Sequence record: LC680885.1
Direction: 5' to 3' (one strand)
DNA length: 64,000 bases
Shown: positions 13,143 through 56,322 of the stretch, in pieces
Numbering within the stretch: the first letter of the stretch is position 1
Layout of the letters: every line of letters starts with the position of its first letter
Position numbers and translations under genes: made by a program
The notes under the pieces: model-generated
What the model saw: only the letters and a program-made list of their open reading frames with translations
Database searches by the model: none
Told to the model about the DNA's origin: nothing

Positions 13143-15176
13143 ATGACTACTAAACCAAAATTAAAGAAAAAAGTGTATTATGATTATAAAACTAATAATG
13201 TTAGTTTTTTAAGAGTAGCTAGAGATCTTAAGAAGAACAACGTTAGAAATTATGGTATTCCATTAACTTTATATGATAAAAATCTTGTGGGAGTAGATCC
13301 TTGGGATCCTGAACTTTCTGATGAAATGAAAACTCGTGTGTTAAGAGAAGCTAAAATTAATATATGGTTTTATCTAAGGGAAGTTATAAGAGTTCCTGTT
13401 CCTGGTGGTAAGGTTATGTATGAACTTCATAGAGGTAATATGGCTATGACTTTTTGTATGCTACATAACCTCGATACAGCTATAATGCTTCCACGTCAGC
13501 ACTATAAAACATATTCAGCTGTATGTTATTATTCATGGATAATGTTATTAGTAGGTAGTAACTATACAATGCTATTTACACATAAATCATATTCAGATAC
13601 AACGGAAAACTTAAAACGTCTTAAAAACTTATTTAAAGAGAAGTGTTTACCTGAATATGTATTAGCTAACTTTGGTGATAAAAATGATAGAGATAAGATT
13701 AATGAGTTTCAATTAGCTAGTAATAATAATACCATTAAAACAGTTTCACCACCAACCAATGCTGAATCTGCAAACAAGGCAGGAAGAGGTAGTACCGTTC
13801 CAATGGTTTGGCTAGATGAGTGGGCTTTCATTCCACATAATCAAACAATGTTTGAAGCAATGAGACCGGCAGTCTCTACAGCATCAGCTATAGCTAAAAA
13901 GAACGGTACACCTTATGGTCTTCTTATCACCACAACACCGAGTACTTTAGATGTACCTCAAGGACAGTTTTTCTTTGAACAAATGAATGATGCGGCTCAA
14001 TGGACAGAAAAAATATATGATTATTACATTAATTCTGAAGAAGAAGGTAACGAAAAATTAGAAGAATATATGGAAAGTAATTCAGGTAATTCATTCATCT
14101 ATATAGAATATTCATATAAAGAATTAGGTAAAGATGACACTTGGTTAGAAAAGCAAAAACGTCAAATTGGTTCTTTAGAAGCAGTTAAACGTGAAATACT
14201 CCTTGAATGGGCATTTAGTAACGATGATTCATTATTTGATGAAGAACAAATGTCAGAATTATCATTATATGCAAATAAAGAGATATATAATACTATTGAT
14301 TTTAAAATAAATGGTAAAACTTATTATGTTCATATGGTTAAAAAGATGGAAAATATGCATGAAAAGAACTGGCTTGTTGGTATTGACATATCTGGCGGTC
14401 TTGGTCGAGATAATACTGCATTTACTGTAGTTGATCCGGGTACATTAGAACCAGTAATGGTCTTCCAAAATAATATAATTAATGGTCCTACTTTCAGAAA
14501 ATTAATTAAAGAACTTATTACACTTTATATACCTAATGCAGTATTAATACCTGAACGTAACTATGCTGGTACAGTAATGATAGAAGATATGATTCAAACT
14601 GATAATATTGGAGATAATATTTTTTATTCATTAAAGAATAGAACAGCAGAAAAACAAGTTGAAGTTAATAAACAAGTATTTAATGAAATGCCTAGACATA
14701 GTACTAATAAAGTTACTAAACAAGTAAGAAGATATGGTATCGATACAACTAAAAAATCTCGTGACTTAATGCTTAATGAAATTTTATCAATGATAGTTGA
14801 AGAAAAGCCTTATCTGGTTAATAATAAACCATTATTCCAACAAATAAAATCTCTTCAAATGAAAAAAGGTAGAATTGATCATCCTGATGGCGGTCATGAT
14901 GACTTACTTATGAGTTATTTATTCTGCTTATACGCATACTATTATGAAAAAGATATTAAGAAATTTGTTAAAGTTAAATACGGTTCAATAGTATCTCCAA
15001 CTGGAGAAAATGCGGAAGAGATTGAAAAAGAAAGACAAGCTAGAAGAAAAGATATTGCATCCATAAAACGTATTGGTGGAATTATTGATGGTAATTCTCC
15101 TAGCAATCCTCTATTACAGAATAATAATTCCGCTCCAAATCAAAAATCAAAAAGAATAATGAATTTATTGGATTGA
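13143..15176 (+). CDS. terL: Terminase large subunit
   Basis: PRQHYKT (Walker A), VWLDEWAF (Walker B), ITTTP coupling motif, VGIDISGG and GHDDLLMS nuclease motifs. Confidence 0.92.
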   Translation: MTTKPKLKKKVYYDYKTNNVSFLRVARDLKKNNVRNYGIPLTLYDKNLVGVDPWDPELSDEMKTRVLREAKINIWFYLREVIRVPVPGGKVMYELHRGNMAMTFCMLHNLDTAIMLPRQHYKTYSAVCYYSWIMLLVGSNYTMLFTHKSYSDTTENLKRLKNLFKEKCLPEYVLANFGDKNDRDKINEFQLASNNNTIKTVSPPTNAESANKAGRGSTVPMVWLDEWAFIPHNQTMFEAMRPAVSTASAIAKKNGTPYGLLITTTPSTLDVPQGQFFFEQMNDAAQWTEKIYDYYINSEEEGNEKLEEYMESNSGNSFIYIEYSYKELGKDDTWLEKQKRQIGSLEAVKREILLEWAFSNDDSLFDEEQMSELSLYANKEIYNTIDFKINGKTYYVHMVKKMENMHEKNWLVGIDISGGLGRDNTAFTVVDPGTLEPVMVFQNNIINGPTFRKLIKELITLYIPNAVLIPERNYAGTVMIEDMIQTDNIGDNIFYSLKNRTAEKQVEVNKQVFNEMPRHSTNKVTKQVRRYGIDTTKKSRDLMLNEILSMIVEEKPYLVNNKPLFQQIKSLQMKKGRIDHPDGGHDDLLMSYLFCLYAYYYEKDIKKFVKVKYGSIVSPTGENAEEIEKERQARRKDIASIKRIGGIIDGNSPSNPLLQNNNSAPNQKSKRIMNLLD

Positions 15177-15184
15177 TTACAATA

Positions 15185-15216
15185 AAGGTAATGGCATAAT
15201 AATTTGTCATTACCTT
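15185..15216 (+). terminator. Intrinsic terminator after terL
   Basis: aaggtaatggca/tgtcattacctt stem followed by a T-run. Confidence 0.75.
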
Positions 15217-15354
15217 TTTATTATCACAAATTTTTATTATTCCATCTTAACTAATTTGTATAATAGAATTTCAAGAATAATTTTAAATTAGAATTTTTTC
15301 TAAATTTAATAGAATAATATAATATATAATAATAAAACGGATGGTGAAAATAAA

Positions 15355-16146
15355 TTGGCAAAAACATATTTAATTGACGATAAAGATGATTTAGAAATGG
15401 TAAAAGAAGAATATGATGAAGTCATTATGAATATATCTGAAGACATTATGATTGATAATATTAAAGAACAAATTGAAGATTCAAATTCAAGACAGTTCTA
15501 TATTAATCAATATCATAAAGATTTCTTTGAATACTTTGAAATTAGATTTAAATTTATTTTAGAAAGATATAAAGAAGATAATGATATCTTAATTAAAACT
15601 AAACAAGTTTATCATGATATTCTTAATGAAATTCAAGAATCTATTGAAAATACTTATCAGTTTTCTTTAGAATTTCCAGAAGATATTTTAATTGAAGATA
15701 AAGCTCAATACATTAAATCATTGTATAATTTCTTTGTATTAAATAAAAAAGAAACTTTAAATAATTTATTTATTAACTATATTGAGAAGAATATAATGCA
15801 ATTAGCTAAAACTTATAAAGATAGTATGGATGAAGATGTTATTAACTCTCTTTCATATAATAACTTAAAGAAAACTATTGATAATGATTATACACCTTTA
15901 GTATATTCTATTCCTGAAATTATTGATGGTATTCATATTTCTGATAATGAAGATGTAATAGAGACTATTATCTATGATGAAGAATCTGAATTAAATAACT
16001 ATCAAATTGATAAAATGTTAGTAGAACAATCTGTAACAGATGTTAGATTTGATAATCATTTAATTAATGTATTTAGAGATTCTTTTATAGAGAATAATGT
16101 ATTACATCGAGAAGTTCAATACTATTTTATAGATAAGTATAAATAA
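15355..16146 (+). CDS. Hypothetical protein (acidic)
   Basis: 263 aa ORF, TTG start with GGTGA RBS. Confidence 0.75.
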   Translation: MAKTYLIDDKDDLEMVKEEYDEVIMNISEDIMIDNIKEQIEDSNSRQFYINQYHKDFFEYFEIRFKFILERYKEDNDILIKTKQVYHDILNEIQESIENTYQFSLEFPEDILIEDKAQYIKSLYNFFVLNKKETLNNLFINYIEKNIMQLAKTYKDSMDEDVINSLSYNNLKKTIDNDYTPLVYSIPEIIDGIHISDNEDVIETIIYDEESELNNYQIDKMLVEQSVTDVRFDNHLINVFRDSFIENNVLHREVQYYFIDKYK

Positions 16147-16170
16147 TAACATATAAGGAGAAAAGCTAAA

Positions 16171-16917
16171 ATGACTGAAGATAAGAGCAAAGAATTAGAT
16201 TTAGAAAAATTAGAACAAGATATAGAACAAGCTAATGATGAATTCGAAAAAGAAAATGAAAAGATTGAGAAAGAGTTAGAAGAAACAAAAGAGGGAATTA
16301 ATAAAGAAATAGCTTCTTATTATGGTAAAGATAGTATTAGTCTTAATGACACTATTTCAGTAGATGCTAAGGTTAATAGATACCAAGAAAAATTAGACTT
16401 TATTAATGGAGATTTAAGTTTTGATAGTGAAGATGATATTCCTGAAAGACTTAAACCTTTTAAAAATATGGAAATAAAAGATACTAAACAAATTGAAAAT
16501 ATTATTCAACAAATTAAAGACAGTAAAGAAGCTAAACATCTTGTAGAAAATATTACTATTAGTAAATTACCAGTTAATGATAATAAACTTAAAAAAGTAA
16601 ATGAAAAATTAAATATGAAAATTTACAGATATAATAAGTTACATGGTAATGAAAATAATGAATATAATTACATTGATTTAGAAGATATTCATAATACTCT
16701 AAAAAATGCTTTAGACAACGATAGTTTCAAAGAATCAAATACATTATACAAATTTATGTGTGCATTAGGTTCATACATGTCGCAAAATTATGAAAAATAT
16801 CCTTACTATATAAAATCTCTTTCTGAAAACGTTGACTACATTGGAAAATTCGGTAATAAATTGGATCAGAACGAAGACTTTATCAAAGTAATAAATAGTA
16901 TTCTTAAGAAATACTAA
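16171..16917 (+). CDS. Hypothetical protein with N-terminal coiled coil
   Basis: 248 aa ORF with AAGGAG RBS. Confidence 0.75.
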   Translation: MTEDKSKELDLEKLEQDIEQANDEFEKENEKIEKELEETKEGINKEIASYYGKDSISLNDTISVDAKVNRYQEKLDFINGDLSFDSEDDIPERLKPFKNMEIKDTKQIENIIQQIKDSKEAKHLVENITISKLPVNDNKLKKVNEKLNMKIYRYNKLHGNENNEYNYIDLEDIHNTLKNALDNDSFKESNTLYKFMCALGSYMSQNYEKYPYYIKSLSENVDYIGKFGNKLDQNEDFIKVINSILKKY

Positions 16918-16919
16918 AA

Positions 16920-16927
16920 TATATTAT
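16920..16927 (+). promoter_or_regulatory. Putative early-type promoter core TATATTAT for the nrd operon
   Basis: TATATTAT 32 nt upstream of nrdH; same core as the longer early motif at 44402, 50536 and 56309. Confidence 0.4.
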
Positions 16928-16959
16928 TAAAAATTATAAGAAAGAGGTTTGATTAAAAG

Positions 16960-17199
16960 ATGGAACAAATTAAATTTTATACTAAGAATAACTGTGCTAA
17001 ATGTGGTTTCAGTAAAATGTTTTTAAATAATAAAGGCGTTGCTTATACTGAAATCAATATTGATGAAGATGAAAGTGCTAAAGAAGAACTTTTATCTAAA
17101 GGATACCAATCATTACCTGTAATTGATTTTGGAACAGATGTAATCGTTGGTAATGATCCTGCTAAATTAAATCAAATTTTATCTACAGTTACCGCTTAA
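16960..17199 (+). CDS. nrdH: Glutaredoxin-like NrdH-redoxin
   Basis: 79 aa; CAKC active site; GYQSLPVI; upstream of nrdI/E/F. Confidence 0.9.
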   Translation: MEQIKFYTKNNCAKCGFSKMFLNNKGVAYTEINIDEDESAKEELLSKGYQSLPVIDFGTDVIVGNDPAKLNQILSTVTA

Positions 17200-17223
17200 T
17201 TAAATATAAAGGAGTCTATAATT

Positions 17224-17424
17224 ATGCAAACTATTTTTAATAGTCCAGAAGAAGTAGATTTTAAAAAATTAGCTGAATTAGCTAGAAATAATGATAATGT
17301 ATTAAATACAAAAGCTGTTCATGAAGGAGAGTACAATTACAATTTCAGTATTGAAGGTTGGAATTACTCATTCAGTTCAGATGGAACTTATTGGAAATGG
17401 AATTATCAACAAGTTAATCAATAA
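17224..17424 (+). CDS. Small protein resembling the N-terminal domain of staphylococcal SceD/IsaA transglycosylases
   Basis: 66 aa with AAGGAG RBS; VDFKKLAELARNND..LN....EGEYNYNF...GWNYSFSSDGTYWKWNY matches the SceD/IsaA N-domain pattern as I recall it; no signal peptide or catalytic domain. Confidence 0.6.
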   Translation: MQTIFNSPEEVDFKKLAELARNNDNVLNTKAVHEGEYNYNFSIEGWNYSFSSDGTYWKWNYQQVNQ

Positions 17425-17442
17425 TAATGATTAATAAAAAAC

Positions 17443-17473
17443 GATCTATCACAGAGATAATCTGTGATGGATC
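17443..17473 (+). terminator. Intrinsic terminator inside the nrd cluster
   Basis: gatctatcacaga/tctgtgatggatc stem plus T-run between the mini-gene and nrdI. Confidence 0.7.
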
Positions 17474-17511
17474 TATTTTTAACGAAAAATTTTATATTTG
17501 GAGAGATTTAA

Positions 17512-17916
17512 ATGAAATTACTTTATTTCTCATTAACAGGAAATAGTAAAAAATTTGCTGAGAAATTAGATAGCTCTATAGTAGGAGAACCTATTGAACT
17601 TAATAGAGATAATTGTGATGATATTAAAATGGATGAAGAGTATGTATTAGTATGTGGATCTTACAATACTCCTCACGCTATTTACAATCATGTAGAAAAA
17701 TTCTTTAATAATGGTAATAATTTAGAATTATGTAAAGGTATAATTGGCTCAGGAAATAGAAACCTAAATTATCAATTCTTAACTACACCTAAAAGATTAT
17801 GTAGTGATTTTAATTTAGAATTGATTGCAGGAGTAGAATTGTTTGGAATTAAAAATGAACATTTAGAAGTAAATAAAAAATTAGAAGAGTTATCTAACTC
17901 TAGTATTATAAATTAA
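17512..17916 (+). CDS. nrdI: Class Ib ribonucleotide reductase flavodoxin NrdI
   Basis: YFSLTGNSKKF and GIIGSGNRN motifs. Confidence 0.92.
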   Translation: MKLLYFSLTGNSKKFAEKLDSSIVGEPIELNRDNCDDIKMDEEYVLVCGSYNTPHAIYNHVEKFFNNGNNLELCKGIIGSGNRNLNYQFLTTPKRLCSDFNLELIAGVELFGIKNEHLEVNKKLEELSNSSIIN

Positions 17917-17942
17917 TATATTGTAAGGAGACTTTTAATAAA

Positions 17943-20144
17943 ATGCCAAAAGAAATAGACTTAACTTCAGAAAAATTTAAAGATTATTCATATAACGAAT
18001 TAAACTCAAGAGGTTCACAATTAAAAGATGGTAATTTAGATTTAGAATTTGAATTAGCATCTGTTAAAAAATATTTCTTAGATTCAGTTAATAAGAATGT
18101 AAGATACTTTAAAACATATAAAGAAAAAATTAATTATTTAGTTGATAATGATTATATTGATGGAGACATGATCAGTAATTATGATTTTGAATTTATTAAA
18201 GGATTAATGAAAGAATTAATGGCTTATAAACATAGATTCACTCGTCTATTAGGAGCTAAGAAATTCTATGAACAGTATGCAATGAAAGATGATGCAGGAG
18301 AAATTTTATTAGAACTATATGAAGATAGAATTTTATTTGTAGCTTTATATTTAGCTGATGGTGATGAAGAATTAGCTAGAAATATTGCTAATGAAATTAT
18401 TACAGGTACTTTCCAACCTGCTACACCAACATTCCTTAATGCAGGTAGAGTACGTTCTGGGGAATTAGTAAGTTGTTTCTTATTAACTATGGAAGATTCT
18501 TTATCATCTATTTATAGAAATATTTCTAACGTGGCACAATTAAGTAAACGTGGTGGAGGAATTGGAGTATCTTTAAGTAATTTACGTGCTGACAATGATC
18601 CAATTAAAGGTGTTGAAGGAGCAGCTTCAGGAGTAGTTCCAGTTATGAAAGTATTTGAAGACACATTATCGTATGTAAATCAATTAGGGCAACGTAATGG
18701 TGCGGGTGCACTTTACTTAAATATTTTCCATAAAGATGTAGTAAAATTCTTAGATACTAAGAAAGAAAATGCTGATGAGAAAGTAAGATTAAAAACTATT
18801 TCATTAGGTTTAACAGTTCCAGATAAATATTATCAATTAGTTAAAGAAAATAAATCATTATATACATTTAGTCCATATGATATTAAAAAATATTACGATT
18901 TAGATTTCGATAGTATTGACTTTAATACTTACTATGATATCTTTGTAGATGATAAACGTATTAGCAAAGAGAAAATGTATGCTCGTGATTTAGAAACTAC
19001 TATTAGTAAATTACAACAAGAGTCTGGTTATCCTTATATCATTAATATTGACACTGCTAATAGAGCTAATCCAATTAGTCATGGTACAATTAAAATGAGT
19101 AACTTATGTAGTGAAATTTTACAAGTACAATACCCTTCATTAGTTGACGATAATCAACAATATGTTAAAACAGGAACAGACGTTTCATGTAACTTAGCTT
19201 CAACTATTGTACCTGGTTTAATGAAATCAGAAGACTTTGGTAAATCAGTTGGAACTATGTTAAGAAGTTTAAATTCAGTAGCAGAAAAATCTAATATTGA
19301 AGCTGTACCTACAGTTAAGAAAGCTAATGATCTATTCCATACAGTTGGTTTAGGTGCAATGGGATTACACACTTATTTAGCCGAAAATCATATTCAATAT
19401 GGATCAGAAGAATCTAAAGACTTTACTAATATTTATTTCATGTTATTAAACTATTGGACATTAGTTGAATCAAATAAAATTGCTAAAGAAAAAGATGAAT
19501 CATTCTACTTATTTGATAAAACTGAATATGCTGATGGTTCTTACTTTGATAAACGTTATATTGGTAAAAATATTCAACCACGTACTGAAAAAGTTAAAGA
19601 ACTATTTGAAGATATCTTTATTCCATCTGATAGTGATTGGGAACAATTAAGAAATAATATCGTTATGGATGGTTTATACAATCAAAATAGATTAGCTGTA
19701 GCACCTAATGGTTCTATTGGTTATGTTAGAGAAGTATCACCTTCAATTCACCCTATTGTTGAATTAATTGAAGAACGTGTAGAAGGTAAAACAGGTACTA
19801 CTTTCTATCCAGCACCAGGTATTACACCAGATAACTTTGATTACTTTAAGAAAAATGCTTATCAATTAGATATGAGAGATATGATTGATTTATATTCAGA
19901 AGCTCAATATCATGTAGATCAAGGTATTTCTATGAATATTTATTTAATGAATGAACTTGATCCAGATCTTTATGAATGGAAAAAAGATTCTTTAGATAAA
20001 GAAACTACTACTCGTGATATTAGTAGATTACGTAACTATGCTTACAGTAAAGGTATTAAATCTATGTATTATACTCGTATTTATTCACCAGACCATGATG
20101 AAAATTCTCAAGGTATTGTTGAATGTGAATCTTGCTCTATTTAA
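17943..20144 (+). CDS. nrdE: Class Ib ribonucleotide reductase alpha subunit
   Basis: FQPATPTFLNAG, LVSCFLL, SNLCSEI, SCNL, APNGS, C-terminal CESC; no ATP cone. Confidence 0.97.
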   Translation: MPKEIDLTSEKFKDYSYNELNSRGSQLKDGNLDLEFELASVKKYFLDSVNKNVRYFKTYKEKINYLVDNDYIDGDMISNYDFEFIKGLMKELMAYKHRFTRLLGAKKFYEQYAMKDDAGEILLELYEDRILFVALYLADGDEELARNIANEIITGTFQPATPTFLNAGRVRSGELVSCFLLTMEDSLSSIYRNISNVAQLSKRGGGIGVSLSNLRADNDPIKGVEGAASGVVPVMKVFEDTLSYVNQLGQRNGAGALYLNIFHKDVVKFLDTKKENADEKVRLKTISLGLTVPDKYYQLVKENKSLYTFSPYDIKKYYDLDFDSIDFNTYYDIFVDDKRISKEKMYARDLETTISKLQQESGYPYIINIDTANRANPISHGTIKMSNLCSEILQVQYPSLVDDNQQYVKTGTDVSCNLASTIVPGLMKSEDFGKSVGTMLRSLNSVAEKSNIEAVPTVKKANDLFHTVGLGAMGLHTYLAENHIQYGSEESKDFTNIYFMLLNYWTLVESNKIAKEKDESFYLFDKTEYADGSYFDKRYIGKNIQPRTEKVKELFEDIFIPSDSDWEQLRNNIVMDGLYNQNRLAVAPNGSIGYVREVSPSIHPIVELIEERVEGKTGTTFYPAPGITPDNFDYFKKNAYQLDMRDMIDLYSEAQYHVDQGISMNIYLMNELDPDLYEWKKDSLDKETTTRDISRLRNYAYSKGIKSMYYTRIYSPDHDENSQGIVECESCSI

Positions 20145-20159
20145 TTGGAGGTATTTAAT

Positions 20160-20378
20160 ATGACATTAAAAGAAAAATTTGAAAGTAAATATAGAAATTT
20201 AAATAAAGAACCAGAAATTTTAATTGTAGTAATTAAACTACCAAGCGGAGCTAAGGAAGTAATTTCCAATAGCTCTGACTTGGATAATAAAGTTCATTAT
20301 TACTTAGAAAATTATGATGATCAATTTAGACATGTTAGAGATAGCAATGTACAGATAATTGATTTCGTATTAGTTTAA
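20160..20378 (+). CDS. Small conserved Firmicutes-phage hypothetical protein
   Basis: 72 aa from ATG 20160 (GGAGG at 20146-20151); LPSGAKEVISN...KVHYYLENYD pattern. Confidence 0.7.
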   Translation: MTLKEKFESKYRNLNKEPEILIVVIKLPSGAKEVISNSSDLDNKVHYYLENYDDQFRHVRDSNVQIIDFVLV

Positions 20379-20403
20379 AAATAAAGAAAAAGGATGAAGT
20401 TAA

Positions 20404-21474
20404 ATGGATAGAGGAGATTTCTTAACAAGTTATACAAAAGATAAAGGTTATTATACACCTGTAAATTGGAATAGAGTAGATGATTATGTAGATATTATGA
20501 CATATGACACTTTAGTATCTCAATTTTGGACATCAACACGTATTCCAGTATCTAATGATATTAAAGCTTGGTCTAATACTGATGATTTAACTAAAGGAGT
20601 AGTTAATAAAGTATTTGCTGAATTAACTATTTTAGATACACTTCAATCTCGTGAAGGTTCTGATGCTTTAATGCATAGTGCATTAACTACATTAGAAGAA
20701 GATGTATTAAGAAATATCGGTTTTATGGAATCAATTCATGCTCGTAGTTATAGTACTATTTTTACTACATTATGTACTTCAAAAGAAGTAGATGAAAACT
20801 TTGAATGGGCAGAAAATAATAAATATGTACAAAAGAAAATTAAATTAATAAATGAAGCTTATCAATCTGGAGATATTCTTAAAATTCAAGCAGCTTCAGT
20901 ATTCTTAGAATCATTCTTATTCTATTCAGGTTTCTATACTCCTTTAAGATTAAAAGATAGTCTTAAATCAGTTCTTGAAATCATAAAATTAATCTTAAGA
21001 GATGAGTCTGTTCATGGTTCATATATTGGATATAAATTCAGTAAGAGATTTGAAAAATTAAGTGAAGAAGAAAAAAATGAAACTAAAATGTGGGTAAATA
21101 ACTTACTATTTGAACTTTATCAAGTTGAATGTGAATTCATTGAAGAAGTTTATACTGAAATTGGTTGGGCAGAAGATGTTAAATTATTCGCTCAATATAA
21201 TGCTAATAAAGCTCTATTAAATCTTAAATTAGATCCTATTTTCGAAACTACTGAAGAAGATGTAAACCCTATCGTAATGGCAGGATTAAAAACTTCTACA
21301 GGAAATCATGACTTTTTCTCTCAAGAAGGTAATGGTTATTTATTAGGTAAAGCTGAAAATACTAAAGAAGAAGATTATGATTCAATCGATATTAATGAAC
21401 TTAATAAGAATATCATTGATTCGTATAAAGATAAAGCAGATGATAGATTTAGTCATAGTTACTATATAGATTAA
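20404..21474 (+). CDS. nrdF: Class Ib ribonucleotide reductase beta subunit
   Basis: LDTLQ, MESIHARSY (radical Tyr), LESFLFYSGF, RDESVHG; all dimetal ligands present. Confidence 0.97.
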   Translation: MDRGDFLTSYTKDKGYYTPVNWNRVDDYVDIMTYDTLVSQFWTSTRIPVSNDIKAWSNTDDLTKGVVNKVFAELTILDTLQSREGSDALMHSALTTLEEDVLRNIGFMESIHARSYSTIFTTLCTSKEVDENFEWAENNKYVQKKIKLINEAYQSGDILKIQAASVFLESFLFYSGFYTPLRLKDSLKSVLEIIKLILRDESVHGSYIGYKFSKRFEKLSEEEKNETKMWVNNLLFELYQVECEFIEEVYTEIGWAEDVKLFAQYNANKALLNLKLDPIFETTEEDVNPIVMAGLKTSTGNHDFFSQEGNGYLLGKAENTKEEDYDSIDINELNKNIIDSYKDKADDRFSHSYYID

Positions 21475-44401: not shown

Positions 44402-44423
44402 TCATTAAAATAATATATATTTA
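44402..44423 (-). promoter_or_regulatory. Putative early promoter TAAATATATATTATTTTAATGA
   Basis: 22 nt identical to 50536-50557 (+); contains TATATTAT. Confidence 0.65.
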
Positions 44424-50535: not shown

Positions 50536-50557
50536 TAAATATATATTATTTTAATGA
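50536..50557 (+). promoter_or_regulatory. Putative early promoter TAAATATATATTATTTTAATGA
   Basis: Identical to 44402-44423 (-). Confidence 0.65.
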
Positions 50558-54247: not shown

Positions 54248-56311
54248 ATGTTAAAAAAGACTACAGAAAATGAATTAGAAAAGTTATTCAATGTCACTAT
54301 TTATAATGAAGAATTTTCTAATTTAAAACCTATGTATAATAGAAAAGATACTGAAACTAGAACTAAATTAAATGACAATCAAAATTCTAGAGTGTATGAG
54401 AATTTAATAAATTTCATTAATTATTCTAAAGCAGGAATGACACACATGTTTTTAACTCGTTCTAATAAATATAGAGATAAATATATTGATTTTCTAAGAA
54501 ATAGACTTGGTAAGGAAGATTTATTAGATGAGGTTGAATTTGAATATACAGATAGATATTTCAGATCTTTCATATATAATATAGATATAATTAGAAGAAG
54601 TGAATATCAAACACATCAATCTATAGAAAATGACTCTAAATTAGAAGATTCATTCTTATTAAGAAATGGAAATACAAATATAGATAGCTTTAAAACGGAT
54701 AATGGTTTATCTATAGAATTTTTAGATAAAGATGTAAAGAAAGATTTTTTAGATAAGAACAAACAAATTAGTTTAGAATCTTTGCTAGCTATCGATACGA
54801 TGGTGTCTAATTCATTAAGAAAGAAATGGTTAAAATCAATTGAAAAAGAAGAATTACCTGATATGAATATTATATTTAAAGAAGTTCCAGAAGTAGTAAT
54901 TATACTAGCAAACAGTATATATGAAAGATCAAATTTCAAATTATCATATGTAGATAGAAGTGTTATTAATATACACGCAGACGTTTCAGATGTTTTTGAA
55001 TCAATACTAACTTTAACTTCTAATTTTAATTATAAATTAATATTAGATTTAATAGATGAAGATTACTTAAGTAAAAATTTAAATCATTTCAAAGCTTCTG
55101 AATTTTCTTTATCTGACAATAATGACATTGATAATATATTTAGTATAATCGGAATTATTAAAAAACAAACGGACGTTATTAATAAATTTATAGAAAAAAG
55201 CAAATCAGATAATCTAGAAGACAATATTAATTTAATAATTAAAGAAAATGAAATAGATGATGACTTTGGAGAAATATTAAAAGTTTATATTGATAGTGTA
55301 TTATCTAAATTTAGAGAATATATTGAAGATGATACCAATATATTAAAAGATTCATCTAAGGTTTTAATAGGTGAAAATCTATTTGATTTCTTTATGAAAT
55401 TAGATGATCTCGAAATTTTAATGATTAGAAATATATACAGAGTTTTAGATAGTAATGTATATAATCCTGTAATCAGAGATGTTAAAGAATCACAAGAAAA
55501 AGTTATGAATGGAATAGTAGATTATTTTAAAAATAATACTAAAAAATTATCTTTAGATTTATCTAATATCGATATAAGTAGATTGAAAGATAGTTCTTTC
55601 ACATTATTAAACGATTTCATAACAAATGGAGAAGTAAGTAATCTTCGTATGAAACCTAATGAAGCTAATATAGAGTATTTCTATAAATTAAGTGTGGATA
55701 AAGAATTAAACCGTGACATATTAAATAGTAATATACAATATATGAAACAGGAATTATTAAAAGGTTTTAATGATGATTCTAAAATGACTTCGAATGCTAT
55801 TATTGAATTTGATAATTTTAATATTAATTTTGCTGTAATAGAAAATAATTCATATAATAATGAAATAGAAATAATGATGCAAGGAGTTACTTTTAAGAAA
55901 AAATTAACTGATGAGGATATTGCTACTATCTTTTTATATTCACATAAAGAAGTTAGTATATATCAAGACAAAAAATTAGTTATCATGGATAGAAATTATT
56001 TCTCTAGAAGAGGTATAAATAAATTTATAAATAATATGAATAATGTCTTCACTGATTTAGATGGAGAAAGTTTATCTAAATATATGTCTTTAATTTATAA
56101 TTTATTATCTTTATCAGATAATTCTTTTGAGGAAGATAAAGCAATTTATAATACTCTATATTACAATAAATTTGAATATATTAATAAAGAAAATGAGTTA
56201 AAAGTTGATAGTTATATTAATATGATTAATAATAAAGATGTAACAGATGATTTTAAAAAGAAATTTAAAAAGGTAAGATCTAAGTATTTAGTTTCTAGAA
56301 TATTTATTTAA
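54248..56311 (+). CDS. Hypothetical protein
   Basis: 687 aa ORF, AAGGAG RBS. Confidence 0.8.
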   Translation: MLKKTTENELEKLFNVTIYNEEFSNLKPMYNRKDTETRTKLNDNQNSRVYENLINFINYSKAGMTHMFLTRSNKYRDKYIDFLRNRLGKEDLLDEVEFEYTDRYFRSFIYNIDIIRRSEYQTHQSIENDSKLEDSFLLRNGNTNIDSFKTDNGLSIEFLDKDVKKDFLDKNKQISLESLLAIDTMVSNSLRKKWLKSIEKEELPDMNIIFKEVPEVVIILANSIYERSNFKLSYVDRSVINIHADVSDVFESILTLTSNFNYKLILDLIDEDYLSKNLNHFKASEFSLSDNNDIDNIFSIIGIIKKQTDVINKFIEKSKSDNLEDNINLIIKENEIDDDFGEILKVYIDSVLSKFREYIEDDTNILKDSSKVLIGENLFDFFMKLDDLEILMIRNIYRVLDSNVYNPVIRDVKESQEKVMNGIVDYFKNNTKKLSLDLSNIDISRLKDSSFTLLNDFITNGEVSNLRMKPNEANIEYFYKLSVDKELNRDILNSNIQYMKQELLKGFNDDSKMTSNAIIEFDNFNINFAVIENNSYNNEIEIMMQGVTFKKKLTDEDIATIFLYSHKEVSIYQDKKLVIMDRNYFSRRGINKFINNMNNVFTDLDGESLSKYMSLIYNLLSLSDNSFEEDKAIYNTLYYNKFEYINKENELKVDSYINMINNKDVTDDFKKKFKKVRSKYLVSRIFI

Positions 56312-56322
56312 ATATATATTAT
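56309..56322 (+). promoter_or_regulatory. Putative early promoter TAAATATATATTAT followed by a 5' hairpin (56326-56355)
   Basis: Third copy of the early motif, upstream of ORF 56384. Confidence 0.55.

What the first reader, a model, noticed from the sequence alone, without database searches (positions are those of the whole stretch)
17224..17424. Stand-alone cytoplasmic copy of the SceD/IsaA N-terminal domain
Seen: a 66 aa ORF with a good RBS: VDFKKLAELARNNDNVLNTKAVHEGEYNYNFSIEGWNYSFSSDGTYWKWNY. Knowledge (from memory): staphylococcal lytic transglycosylases SceD and IsaA begin, after the signal peptide, with a domain of the form L..LA..N...LN..PI..G.Y...F...G..Y.F.S.GT...W.Y. Here both the signal peptide and the catalytic domain are missing. 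Inference: a captured host domain used as a mimic or dominant-negative of a cell-wall-remodelling enzyme or its partner. It is also a strong host indicator.
Basis: partly seen in the sequence, partly recalled or inferred. Interest (0 to 1): 0.7.

Follow-up and report, generated by a model that had tools for sequence, protein, structure and literature searches.

The report
Phage stand-alone IsaA/SceD wall-binding domain
A jumbo Staphylococcus phage carries a small, conserved gene that encodes only the non-catalytic N-terminal domain of the host wall enzymes IsaA and SceD; this gene family is already catalogued and common in staphylococcal phages, but its function has not been tested.

Summary
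The window is Staphylococcus jumbo phage S6, and 17224-17424 (+) is its annotated gene S6_0180. It has a Shine-Dalgarno site and a terminator hairpin directly downstream. [quoted passage not shown] It has no signal peptide and no catalytic domain.

It is not a one-off. Signal-peptide-less stand-alone NCD genes occur in at least four lineages of Staphylococcaceae phages (PHROG 3504). The nrdH-NCD-nrdI arrangement is kept in diverged jumbo phages, and dN/dS is 0.16-0.22.

In a SA2-like siphovirus the gene sits 20 nt after holin-endolysin. In phage K the homologue (gp227) is transcribed late, and its protein was detected in phage preparations.

My best reading is a non-enzymatic wall-binding module. 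It would accumulate inside the cell and reach the wall only when holin breaches the membrane. This is inferred, not shown.

"Cytoplasmic mimic/dominant-negative" is untested. Direct capture from S. aureus is not supported. GenBank labels such as "transglycosylase" or "isaA" are over-annotations.

The finding is a new member of a known kind and of moderate interest.

The parts
17209..17214 (+). Shine-Dalgarno sequence AAGGAG, 9 nt upstream of the ATG
   Evidence: Read directly from the sequence.
17224..17424 (+). CDS S6_0180, 66 aa plus stop: stand-alone IsaA-like_N (NCD) protein
   Evidence: ORF list. Annotated CDS in LC680885.1. phrog_3504 E 2.8e-16 and phrog_3310 E 1.3e-13. PF27330. dN/dS 0.155 against LY01 and 0.22 against SA1.
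17245..17412 (+). The NCD itself (residues 8-63). Predicted helix at 13-21, short helix at 26-29, and a three-stranded antiparallel sheet at 39-43, 46-52 and 57-63
   Evidence: HMM envelope 8-63. AlphaFold2 model with mean pLDDT 86.2. 10 of 29 residues in 35-63 are aromatic.
17224..17244 (+). N-terminal extension M-x-TIF-x, specific to the jumbo-phage subfamily. It is hydrophilic and is not a signal peptide
   Evidence: Alignments A2 and A3. SA1 and LY01 translations. Hydropathy.
17443..17483 (+). Intrinsic-terminator-like hairpin (13-bp stem, 5-nt loop) followed by a T-run, 19 nt after the stop codon
   Evidence: one search found 3 terminator-like sites in 15100-18000 against 0.3 expected from shuffles. 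A terminator is annotated at the equivalent place in MarsHill and Madawaska.
16960..17199 (+). nrdH (glutaredoxin-like), the upstream neighbour 24 nt away on the same strand. Probably in the same transcription unit
   Evidence: Pfam Glutaredoxin E 1e-11. Annotation. The nrdH-NCD order is kept in LY01, SA1 and a 56%-identical homologue.
17512..17916 (+). nrdI, the downstream neighbour after the terminator. It opens nrdI-nrdE-(77 aa ORF)-nrdF
   Evidence: Pfam Flavodoxin_NdrI E 2.4e-23. Annotation.
15184..15227 (+). Upstream terminator-like hairpin after the terminase gene. Together with 17443-17483 it brackets a putative four-gene unit: S6_0150, S6_0160, nrdH, NCD
   Evidence: Gene order. That these form one unit is inferred.

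Best explanation
S6_0180 is a non-enzymatic, soluble copy of the IsaA/SceD N-terminal conserved domain (NCD, Pfam IsaA-like_N). It is a small helix-plus-three-stranded-sheet module. In IsaA, the N-terminal region that contains this domain carries non-covalent cell-wall binding.

The phage makes the protein inside the infected cell without a signal peptide. I propose that, like an endolysin, it reaches the staphylococcal wall only when holin breaches the membrane at the end of infection. There it would occupy the wall sites that NCD-bearing host (IsaA/SceD) and phage (Tgl) transglycosylases use. It would act as a lysis-associated or post-lysis wall-binding factor, for example by displacing wall-bound host enzymes or coating wall debris.

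Shown: gene, homology, fold prediction, purifying selection, lack of export signal and of catalytic domain, and the genomic contexts in other phages.

Inferred: wall binding by this protein, holin-dependent access, and any downstream benefit.
For: Homology to the NCD is strong (PF27330).

Koedijk et al. 2017 (PMC5557936) define the NCD as IsaA residues 30-84. They show that the N-region containing it binds S. aureus cell walls without the C-terminal domain and is surface exposed.

The most conserved polar stretch of the family (N23, L27-N28, H33-E34-G35, S52-D53-G54) is retained in S6.

Jeotgalicoccus encodes secreted proteins made of two or three tandem NCDs with no catalytic domain, the usual layout of a binding repeat.

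The gene is kept under purifying selection, with dN/dS 0.155 and 0.22, and in conserved synteny in diverged jumbo phages.

Stand-alone copies without a signal peptide exist in four phage lineages:
- In a SA2-like siphovirus the gene starts 20 nt after holin-endolysin (CHAP-Amidase_2-SH3_5).
- The fRuSau02 homologue RS_041 was detected as protein by LC-MS/MS in purified phage (PMC5618024).
Against: - No experiment addresses any stand-alone NCD.
- In S6 the gene sits with nucleotide-metabolism genes, not lysis genes, and I could not assign its timing. There is no convincing AR9-type early or late promoter upstream.
- The protein is acidic (pI 4.6). Most wall-binding modules of staphylococcal lysins are basic (my knowledge).
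- The DC4 virion proteome does not list the orthologue.
- The fRuSau02 'structural' list also contains NrdE, NrdF, ligase and RNase H, so it proves expression, not location.
- The predicted fold has no significant match in the PDB, so structure gives no independent functional hint.
Confidence: 0.4

Rival explanations
1. Intracellular mimic or trans-acting inhibitor. The free NCD binds a partner of IsaA/SceD, or their catalytic domain, and acts as a dominant-negative or PepSY-like inhibitor of lytic transglycosylases. The partner could be a host enzyme before export, or IsaA/SceD/Tgl enzymes after release.
For: It has no signal peptide and lies in an operon with nrdH, which suggests expression during the metabolic phase. 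The NCD profile picks up PepSY-repeat proteins at its hairpin motif. hhalign of NCD against those repeats gives probability 89%, E 2e-6, over 29 columns. PepSY domains act as peptidase pro-domain inhibitors, and YpeB, which carries PepSY domains, partners the spore lytic transglycosylase SleB (my knowledge).
Against: IsaA and SceD are exported by Sec and act outside the membrane, so a cytoplasmic protein does not meet the mature enzymes. No NCD sequence reaches Pfam PepSY even at E 10. Foldseek does not return PepSY structures. Each individual match to a PepSY repeat scores only 12-18 bits. S6-like phages lack the full-length Tgl that might need regulating.
Confidence: 0.2
2. Virion-associated adhesin or decoration. 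The small NCD protein is carried on the particle and helps it hold on to the staphylococcal wall.
For: The Kayvirus homologue RS_041 and its neighbour RS_042 were found in purified fRuSau02 particles and are annotated as structural. gp226 and gp227 are co-expressed late with morphogenesis genes.
Against: The fRuSau02 list of 78 proteins includes obvious non-structural enzymes, and its authors discuss carry-over. Neither gp227 nor gp226 matches any chain of a solved structure. The S6-like orthologue is absent from the DC4 virion proteome. The gp226 partner family is absent from jumbo phages. The S6 gene is not in a structural module.
Confidence: 0.15
3. Free binding subunit of a lytic enzyme. 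As with the extra free cell-wall-binding domains of some endolysins, the NCD associates with a phage hydrolase and supplies or multiplies its wall-targeting module.
For: In the SA2-like siphovirus the gene lies directly after the endolysin. Precedent of free CBD subunits in the enterococcal Lys170 and clostridial CTP1L endolysins (my knowledge).
Against: It is a separate gene, not an internal start in a lysin gene. The neighbouring SA2-like endolysin already has its own SH3_5 domain and no NCD. S6 has no NCD-bearing enzyme with which to form a hetero-oligomer (one tblastn place per record).
Confidence: 0.1
4. Decaying remnant of a transglycosylase gene with no function of its own.
For: It is short and lacks the enzyme part. 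Several databases still call it a transglycosylase.
Against: dN/dS is 0.16-0.22, comparable with nrdI next door. The frame is intact, with its own SD and terminator. Length and synteny are conserved across jumbo phages down to 56% identity. A comparable 57-68-aa stand-alone form is kept in four phage lineages. The homologous protein has been detected.
Confidence: 0.05

Closest known systems
NCD (N-terminal conserved domain) of S. aureus IsaA and SceD; Pfam PF27330 IsaA-like_N (Koedijk et al. 2017, PMC5557936)
   Same: The same domain by sequence: 39-50% identity over about 55 residues, with all family-invariant residues present (G35, Y37, F41). Same predicted helix plus three-stranded sheet. 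Restricted to Staphylococcaceae and their phages.
   Different: In IsaA/SceD the domain follows a Sec signal peptide and is tethered by a low-complexity linker to a catalytic domain (PF06737/SLT). S6_0180 has neither, and it carries a subfamily-specific M-x-TIF N-terminal extension.
Kayvirus small protein: phage K gp227 = fRuSau02 RS_041 = G1 ORF245 (PHROG 3504)
   Same: A stand-alone NCD of 57 aa without signal peptide, followed by a terminator. It is a member of PHROG 3504, which S6_0180 matches at E 2.8e-16.
   Different: About 41-43% identity and a separate clade in the tree. It is always paired with the gp226 family (phrog_3319), which jumbo phages lack. These phages also carry a full-length secreted Tgl. 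Late expression and protein detection are documented for it, not for S6.
Secreted phage transglycosylase Tgl of Twort-like phages (SEP1 gp165, Twort Tgl)
   Same: A phage-encoded protein carrying the same NCD.
   Different: It is a complete enzyme with signal peptide, NCD, linker and catalytic domain, 219-245 aa long. S6-like phages have only the NCD.
Free cell-wall-binding-domain subunits of phage endolysins (Lys170, CTP1L, CD27L; from my knowledge)
   Same: A non-catalytic wall-binding module made on its own by a phage, without signal peptide, acting at lysis.
   Different: Those arise from an in-frame internal start within the endolysin gene and oligomerise with the identical domain of the full-length enzyme. 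Here it is an independent gene of a different fold family with no cognate enzyme in S6.
PepSY domain (PF03413), as in YpeB, the partner of the spore lytic transglycosylase SleB
   Same: The order helix, loop, then an aromatic/acidic hairpin motif ([DE]G.Y...F...G..Y.F). Weak profile-profile similarity. An association with lytic transglycosylases.
   Different: No NCD sequence reaches the Pfam PepSY model. Foldseek gives no match to PepSY structures. Only 29 columns align.

Membership tests
Pfam PF27330 IsaA-like_N / NCD of Koedijk et al. | Significant match to the family profile over the whole domain of about 55 residues | tested here: met
   Precomputed PF27330 hit for this exact protein, named IsaA-like_N. 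My own profile built from A3 covers residues 8-63 at 97 bits. BLASTP E 1e-17 to a SceD-type NCD. The local Pfam copy predates the family and gives no hit.
Pfam PF27330 IsaA-like_N / NCD of Koedijk et al. | Non-covalent binding to the staphylococcal cell wall | not testable with these tools
   Shown only for the IsaA N-region (PMC5557936). It needs a binding assay with the phage protein.
PHROG 3504 (small phage proteins of unknown function) | Match to the 57-position profile | tested here: met
   E 2.8e-16, residues 9-62 on profile positions 2-55 of 57.
IsaA/SceD-type lytic transglycosylases (as several GenBank records label this protein) | C-terminal catalytic domain (PF06737 Transglycosylase-like, or SLT PF01464) | tested here: not met
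   No Pfam domain in the 66-aa protein at E up to 1. The protein ends 3 residues after the NCD. Full-length relatives do show PF06737/PF01464. No catalytic domain elsewhere in the window.
IsaA/SceD-type lytic transglycosylases (as several GenBank records label this protein) | N-terminal Sec signal peptide (secreted, wall-associated protein) | tested here: not met
   Maximum hydropathy over 11 residues is -0.01, against at least 2.0 in host and phage full-length proteins. An in-frame stop 8 codons upstream excludes a longer N-terminus.
PepSY (PF03413) | Match to the Pfam model, or a structural match to PepSY domains | tested here: not met
   No PepSY hit for any of 22 NCD sequences at E up to 10. 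No PepSY structure among Foldseek PDB matches. The only positive signal is hhalign probability 89% over 29 columns against PepSY repeats of two proteins, which I treat as a lead only.
Free CBD subunits of endolysins | Translated from an internal in-frame start of a lysin gene, and identical to the lysin's own binding domain | tested here: not met
   It is an independent gene between nrdH and nrdI. There is only one NCD-encoding place in the S6 genome.
Virion structural proteins | Presence in purified particles | tested here: inconclusive
   The Kayvirus homologue is listed in the fRuSau02 LC-MS/MS set, which also holds non-structural enzymes. The S6-like orthologue DC4_00248 is not mentioned in the DC4 structural-proteome section; it occurs once in the main text, in the lytic-protein section.

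The most novel reading that the evidence does not exclude
The free NCD is a trans-acting regulator. It would be a PepSY-like module that phages of Staphylococcaceae release or deploy to block IsaA/SceD-family lytic transglycosylases, or to occupy their wall sites. Possible effects are altered daughter-cell separation or wall turnover, or masking of wall debris so that progeny virions are not lost to it. If true, the NCD of IsaA/SceD itself would be a regulatory domain analogous to YpeB-SleB, not merely an anchor.
Probability: 0.12. Interest if true: 0.6.

Novelty: new member of a known kind. Interest (0 to 1): 0.35.

Why it matters
The NCD of IsaA is the epitope of a protective human monoclonal antibody and a vaccine candidate region (PMC5557936). 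However, its molecular ligand and fold are unknown.

At least four lineages of staphylococcal phages keep a minimal, signal-peptide-less 57-68-aa version under purifying selection. This argues that the domain has an autonomous activity worth assaying. It also offers a naturally minimal construct for structure and binding studies.

On the practical side, the result corrects database labels. Records and one paper count this 66-aa protein among the 'lytic enzymes/transglycosylases' of jumbo phages, although it has no catalytic domain. The family is also a clean taxonomic marker for phages of Staphylococcaceae.

None of this changes current understanding unless the function is established.

Tried and rejected
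- **Local Pfam and NCBIfam scans of the ORF.** No meaningful hit. The Pfam family exists only in a newer release and surfaced through precomputed annotations.
- **PDB sequence searches with the ORF, the NCD profile, phage K gp227 and gp226.** Nothing significant; a WW-domain match at E 0.16 is noise.
- **Foldseek of the pLDDT-86 model.** No PDB match with E <= 0.001; the best is E 1.2. BFVD returns only family members.
- **PepSY relationship.** A weak, local hhalign signal was not confirmed by Pfam scans of 22 NCDs. I kept it only as a lead.
- **Split-enzyme idea** (a catalytic domain encoded elsewhere in S6). tblastn with the SceD-type and Tgl-type catalytic domains showed no jumbo staphylococcal phage among the rows shown and nothing in the window.
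- **Timing of expression from promoter motifs.** The AR9 early consensus has three exact copies elsewhere in the window, none upstream of this unit. TATATTAT at 16920 is not informative, with 28 copies seen against about 42 expected from base composition. No AACA-N6-T[AG] lies in the upstream intergenic stretches I read.
- **The 515A1 'structural protein' label.** The 515A1 papers hold no virion proteomics. The label is identical to the experimentally based fRuSau02 annotation and probably derives from it.
- **One literature search returned only irrelevant hits.**
- **Phylogeny of a 56-column domain.** It is only partly resolved, so the origin of the S6 copy remains tentative.

Full report
**What is there.** The window is identical to Staphylococcus phage S6 (LC680885.1), a 267-kb jumbo phage of the AR9/PBS1-like, uracil-DNA group, at the same coordinates. 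The ORF at 17224-17424 (+) is its annotated CDS S6_0180, 'hypothetical protein'. It has an AAGGAG Shine-Dalgarno site 9 nt upstream. An in-frame stop 8 codons upstream rules out a longer N-terminus. A 13-bp terminator-like hairpin with a T-run starts 19 nt after the stop. The gene lies 24 nt behind nrdH. After the hairpin come nrdI, nrdE, a 77-aa ORF and nrdF. A second terminator-like hairpin after the terminase gene (15184-15217) suggests a four-gene unit of S6_0150, S6_0160, nrdH and this ORF. That unit is an inference.

**Is the resemblance real?** Yes.
- The protein matches PHROG 3504, a 57-position profile of small phage proteins, at E 2.8e-16.
- It matches the PHROG 'transglycosylase' family 3310 only at positions 26-82 of 231, at E 1.3e-13.
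- BLASTP against a SceD-type protein of S. schweitzeri gives 27/54 identities, E 1e-17, confined to the stretch right after the signal peptide.
- The large protein collection carries a precomputed Pfam hit, PF27330, named IsaA-like_N. My local Pfam copy is older and finds nothing.
- A profile of ten such domains, searched against 1.84 billion representatives, found only 72 clusters. Nearly all are either 220-250-aa IsaA/SceD-like proteins with the domain at residues 25-90, or 57-68-aa stand-alone proteins.
- Genome hits come from Staphylococcus, Salinicoccus, Jeotgalicoccus and Corticicoccus, and cluster names add Macrococcus. Phage hits are all Staphylococcus or Mammaliicoccus phages.

Koedijk et al. 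2017 described this domain as the NCD of IsaA (residues 30-84). They found it only at the N-termini of IsaA/SceD-type proteins. They showed that the N-region containing it binds the S. aureus cell wall non-covalently and is surface exposed (PMC5557936).

**What is missing.** The S6 protein has no hydrophobic N-terminal segment, whereas every full-length relative has one. It ends three residues after the domain, so it has no catalytic domain. Full-length relatives carry PF06737 or SLT. The S6 genome holds a single NCD-encoding place. The window holds no IsaA/SceD/Tgl-type catalytic domain. Searches of the phage collection with both catalytic-domain types listed no jumbo staphylococcal phage. 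Labels such as 'isaA: putative transglycosylase' (DC4), 'transglycosylase SLT domain-containing protein' (SA1, PB50) and its listing among DC4's lytic enzymes (PMC10638138) are therefore over-annotations.

**Is it a functional gene?** The arrangement nrdH-NCD-(nrdI) is kept in LY01, in SA1 (a S. lentus phage) and in a metagenomic relative only 56% identical. dN/dS is 0.155 against LY01 (dS 0.51) and 0.22 against SA1 (dS 0.94), similar to nrdI next door. A subfamily-specific N-terminal motif, M-x-TIF, is also conserved.

AlphaFold2 with a 22-sequence alignment gives a confident model (mean pLDDT 86). It shows a helix at 13-21, a short helix at 26-29 and a three-stranded antiparallel sheet at 39-63. 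The strands alternate aromatic and polar residues, with 10 aromatics in 29 residues. Foldseek finds no significant PDB match and, among viral models, only family members.

**The wider family changes the picture.** Stand-alone, signal-peptide-less NCD genes occur in at least four phage lineages.
1. S6-like jumbo phages.
2. Twort-like Herelleviridae. Phage K gp227 (57 aa) follows gp226 (phrog_3319) in a two-gene unit between terminators. The same genomes also encode a complete secreted transglycosylase Tgl with its own NCD.
3. A SA2-like 89-kb siphovirus, where the 57-aa gene starts 20 nt after holin and a CHAP-Amidase_2-SH3_5 endolysin.
4. An unassigned phage-like contig with a full-length IsaA-like gene, a nuclease gene and a 61-aa NCD gene.

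[quoted passage not shown] The identical fRuSau02 protein RS_041 was detected by LC-MS/MS in purified phage. However, that list of 78 proteins also includes NrdE, NrdF, ligase and RNase H, so it shows expression rather than location (PMC5618024). Jeotgalicoccus species encode secreted proteins with two or three tandem NCDs and no catalytic domain. That is typical of a binding repeat acting on its own.

**Origin.** In a maximum-likelihood tree of 72 NCDs (56 columns, many forks unresolved), the jumbo-phage copies group with the small ORFs of Sciuriunavirus phages and a Macrococcus caseolyticum IsaA-like protein (support 87/85). They sit apart from the Kayvirus gp227 clade (96/93), the phage Tgl clade and S. 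aureus-complex SceD. Direct capture from S. aureus is therefore not supported. The gene looks like an old phage family exchanged among phages of Staphylococcaceae.

**Most likely mechanism.** I read the protein as a non-enzymatic wall-binding module. The missing signal peptide need not mean a cytoplasmic target. Canonical endolysins also lack one and reach the wall through holin lesions (established knowledge). The lysis-cassette position in one lineage and the late expression in another both fit such a route. At the wall it would occupy the sites used by NCD-bearing enzymes. Whether that aids lysis, displaces host enzymes or masks debris cannot be decided here.

The weak points are these:
- The S6 gene sits among nucleotide-metabolism genes.
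- Its timing is unknown, and no convincing AR9-type promoter lies upstream.
- The protein is acidic, pI 4.6.
- No stand-alone NCD has ever been assayed.

**Rivals.** They are listed in full in the Rival explanations section.
- A cytoplasmic mimic or trans-inhibitor gains a little from a local profile similarity to PepSY repeats. Pfam scans and Foldseek do not confirm that similarity.
- A virion adhesin rests on one permissive proteome. The DC4 proteome and the PDB do not back it.
- A free binding subunit of a lysin lacks a cognate enzyme in S6.
- A decaying remnant is contradicted by purifying selection and conserved synteny.

**Verdict.** It is unproven about function and probably wrong about direct host capture. 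The family is already catalogued (Pfam PF27330, PHROG 3504) and the gene is already in GenBank. It is thus a new member of a known kind with unknown function, and of moderate interest.

Noticed in passing
window 16960-21474: A complete class Ib ribonucleotide reductase cluster in the phage: nrdH, (NCD gene), nrdI, nrdE (733 aa), a 77-aa ORF (phrog_3915, unknown function) and nrdF. In LY01 and SA1 an extra ORF of about 240 aa is inserted next to nrdI (L020:2212-2925; L021:1746-2489). It may be a mobile endonuclease, but I did not examine it.
   Followed up: partly
window 44410-44422 (-), 50537-50549 (+), 56310-56322 (+): Three exact copies of the 13-nt early promoter consensus of Bacillus phage AR9 (AAATATATATTAT). 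They are likely virion-RNAP early promoters of S6. By count alone they are not above shuffled expectation, but all three share further flanking bases.
   Followed up: partly
L043:3113-5174 (ENA contig k141_2214, a SA2-like siphovirus): Holin, a CHAP-Amidase_2-SH3_5 endolysin and a 57-aa IsaA-like_N gene lie in a row, with the last starting 20 nt after the endolysin stop. This looks like a three-gene lysis cassette.
   Followed up: partly
P0003 (Jeotgalicoccus, 246 aa); P0011 and P0068 (Jeotgalicoccus-type, 244 and 210 aa): These are secreted bacterial proteins made of one to three NCD copies without any catalytic domain. In P0011 and P0068 the copies follow an unrelated N-terminal region.
   Followed up: partly
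P0014 and P0059 against alignment A3: The NCD profile picks up the helix-loop-hairpin motif of PepSY repeats in RsgI-like proteins, at 12-18 bits per repeat. hhalign gives probability 89% over 29 columns. This is a possible distant relationship between the NCD and PepSY, unconfirmed by Pfam or Foldseek.
   Followed up: partly
L001:4484-5180 (phage K gp226-gp227); L039:3594-4204: In Twort-like phages the small NCD gene always follows a 136-160-aa gene of unknown function (phrog_3319), and in phage K and fRuSau02 the pair lies between terminators. That partner family is absent from the jumbo phages.
   Followed up: partly
GenBank records MW218148.1 (SA1), WPH64098.1 (PB50), MZ779063.1 (DC4), MN091626.1 (PALS_2), KX171212.1: The 64-67-aa NCD-only proteins are labelled 'transglycosylase SLT domain-containing protein', 'isaA putative transglycosylase' or similar, although no SLT or catalytic domain is present.
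   Followed up: yes
L033 and L036 (JBEAMH01, titled S. aureus strain MH_19I_MKU): Both SceD-like genes of this 'S. aureus' assembly group tightly with those of S. equorum and Staphylococcus sp. S9/NAM3COL9, not with the S. aureus complex. The assembly may be misnamed.
   Followed up: no
L031:2414-3130: The SceD-like gene of Staphylococcus sp. NAM3COL9 runs into a masked stretch (N). I left it out of the alignments and did not fill it.
   Followed up: no
window 16960-17424: nrdH and the NCD ORF are in the same reading frame, separated by one TAA and 8 codons. The frame relation is not kept in LY01, so it is probably a coincidence.
   Followed up: yes
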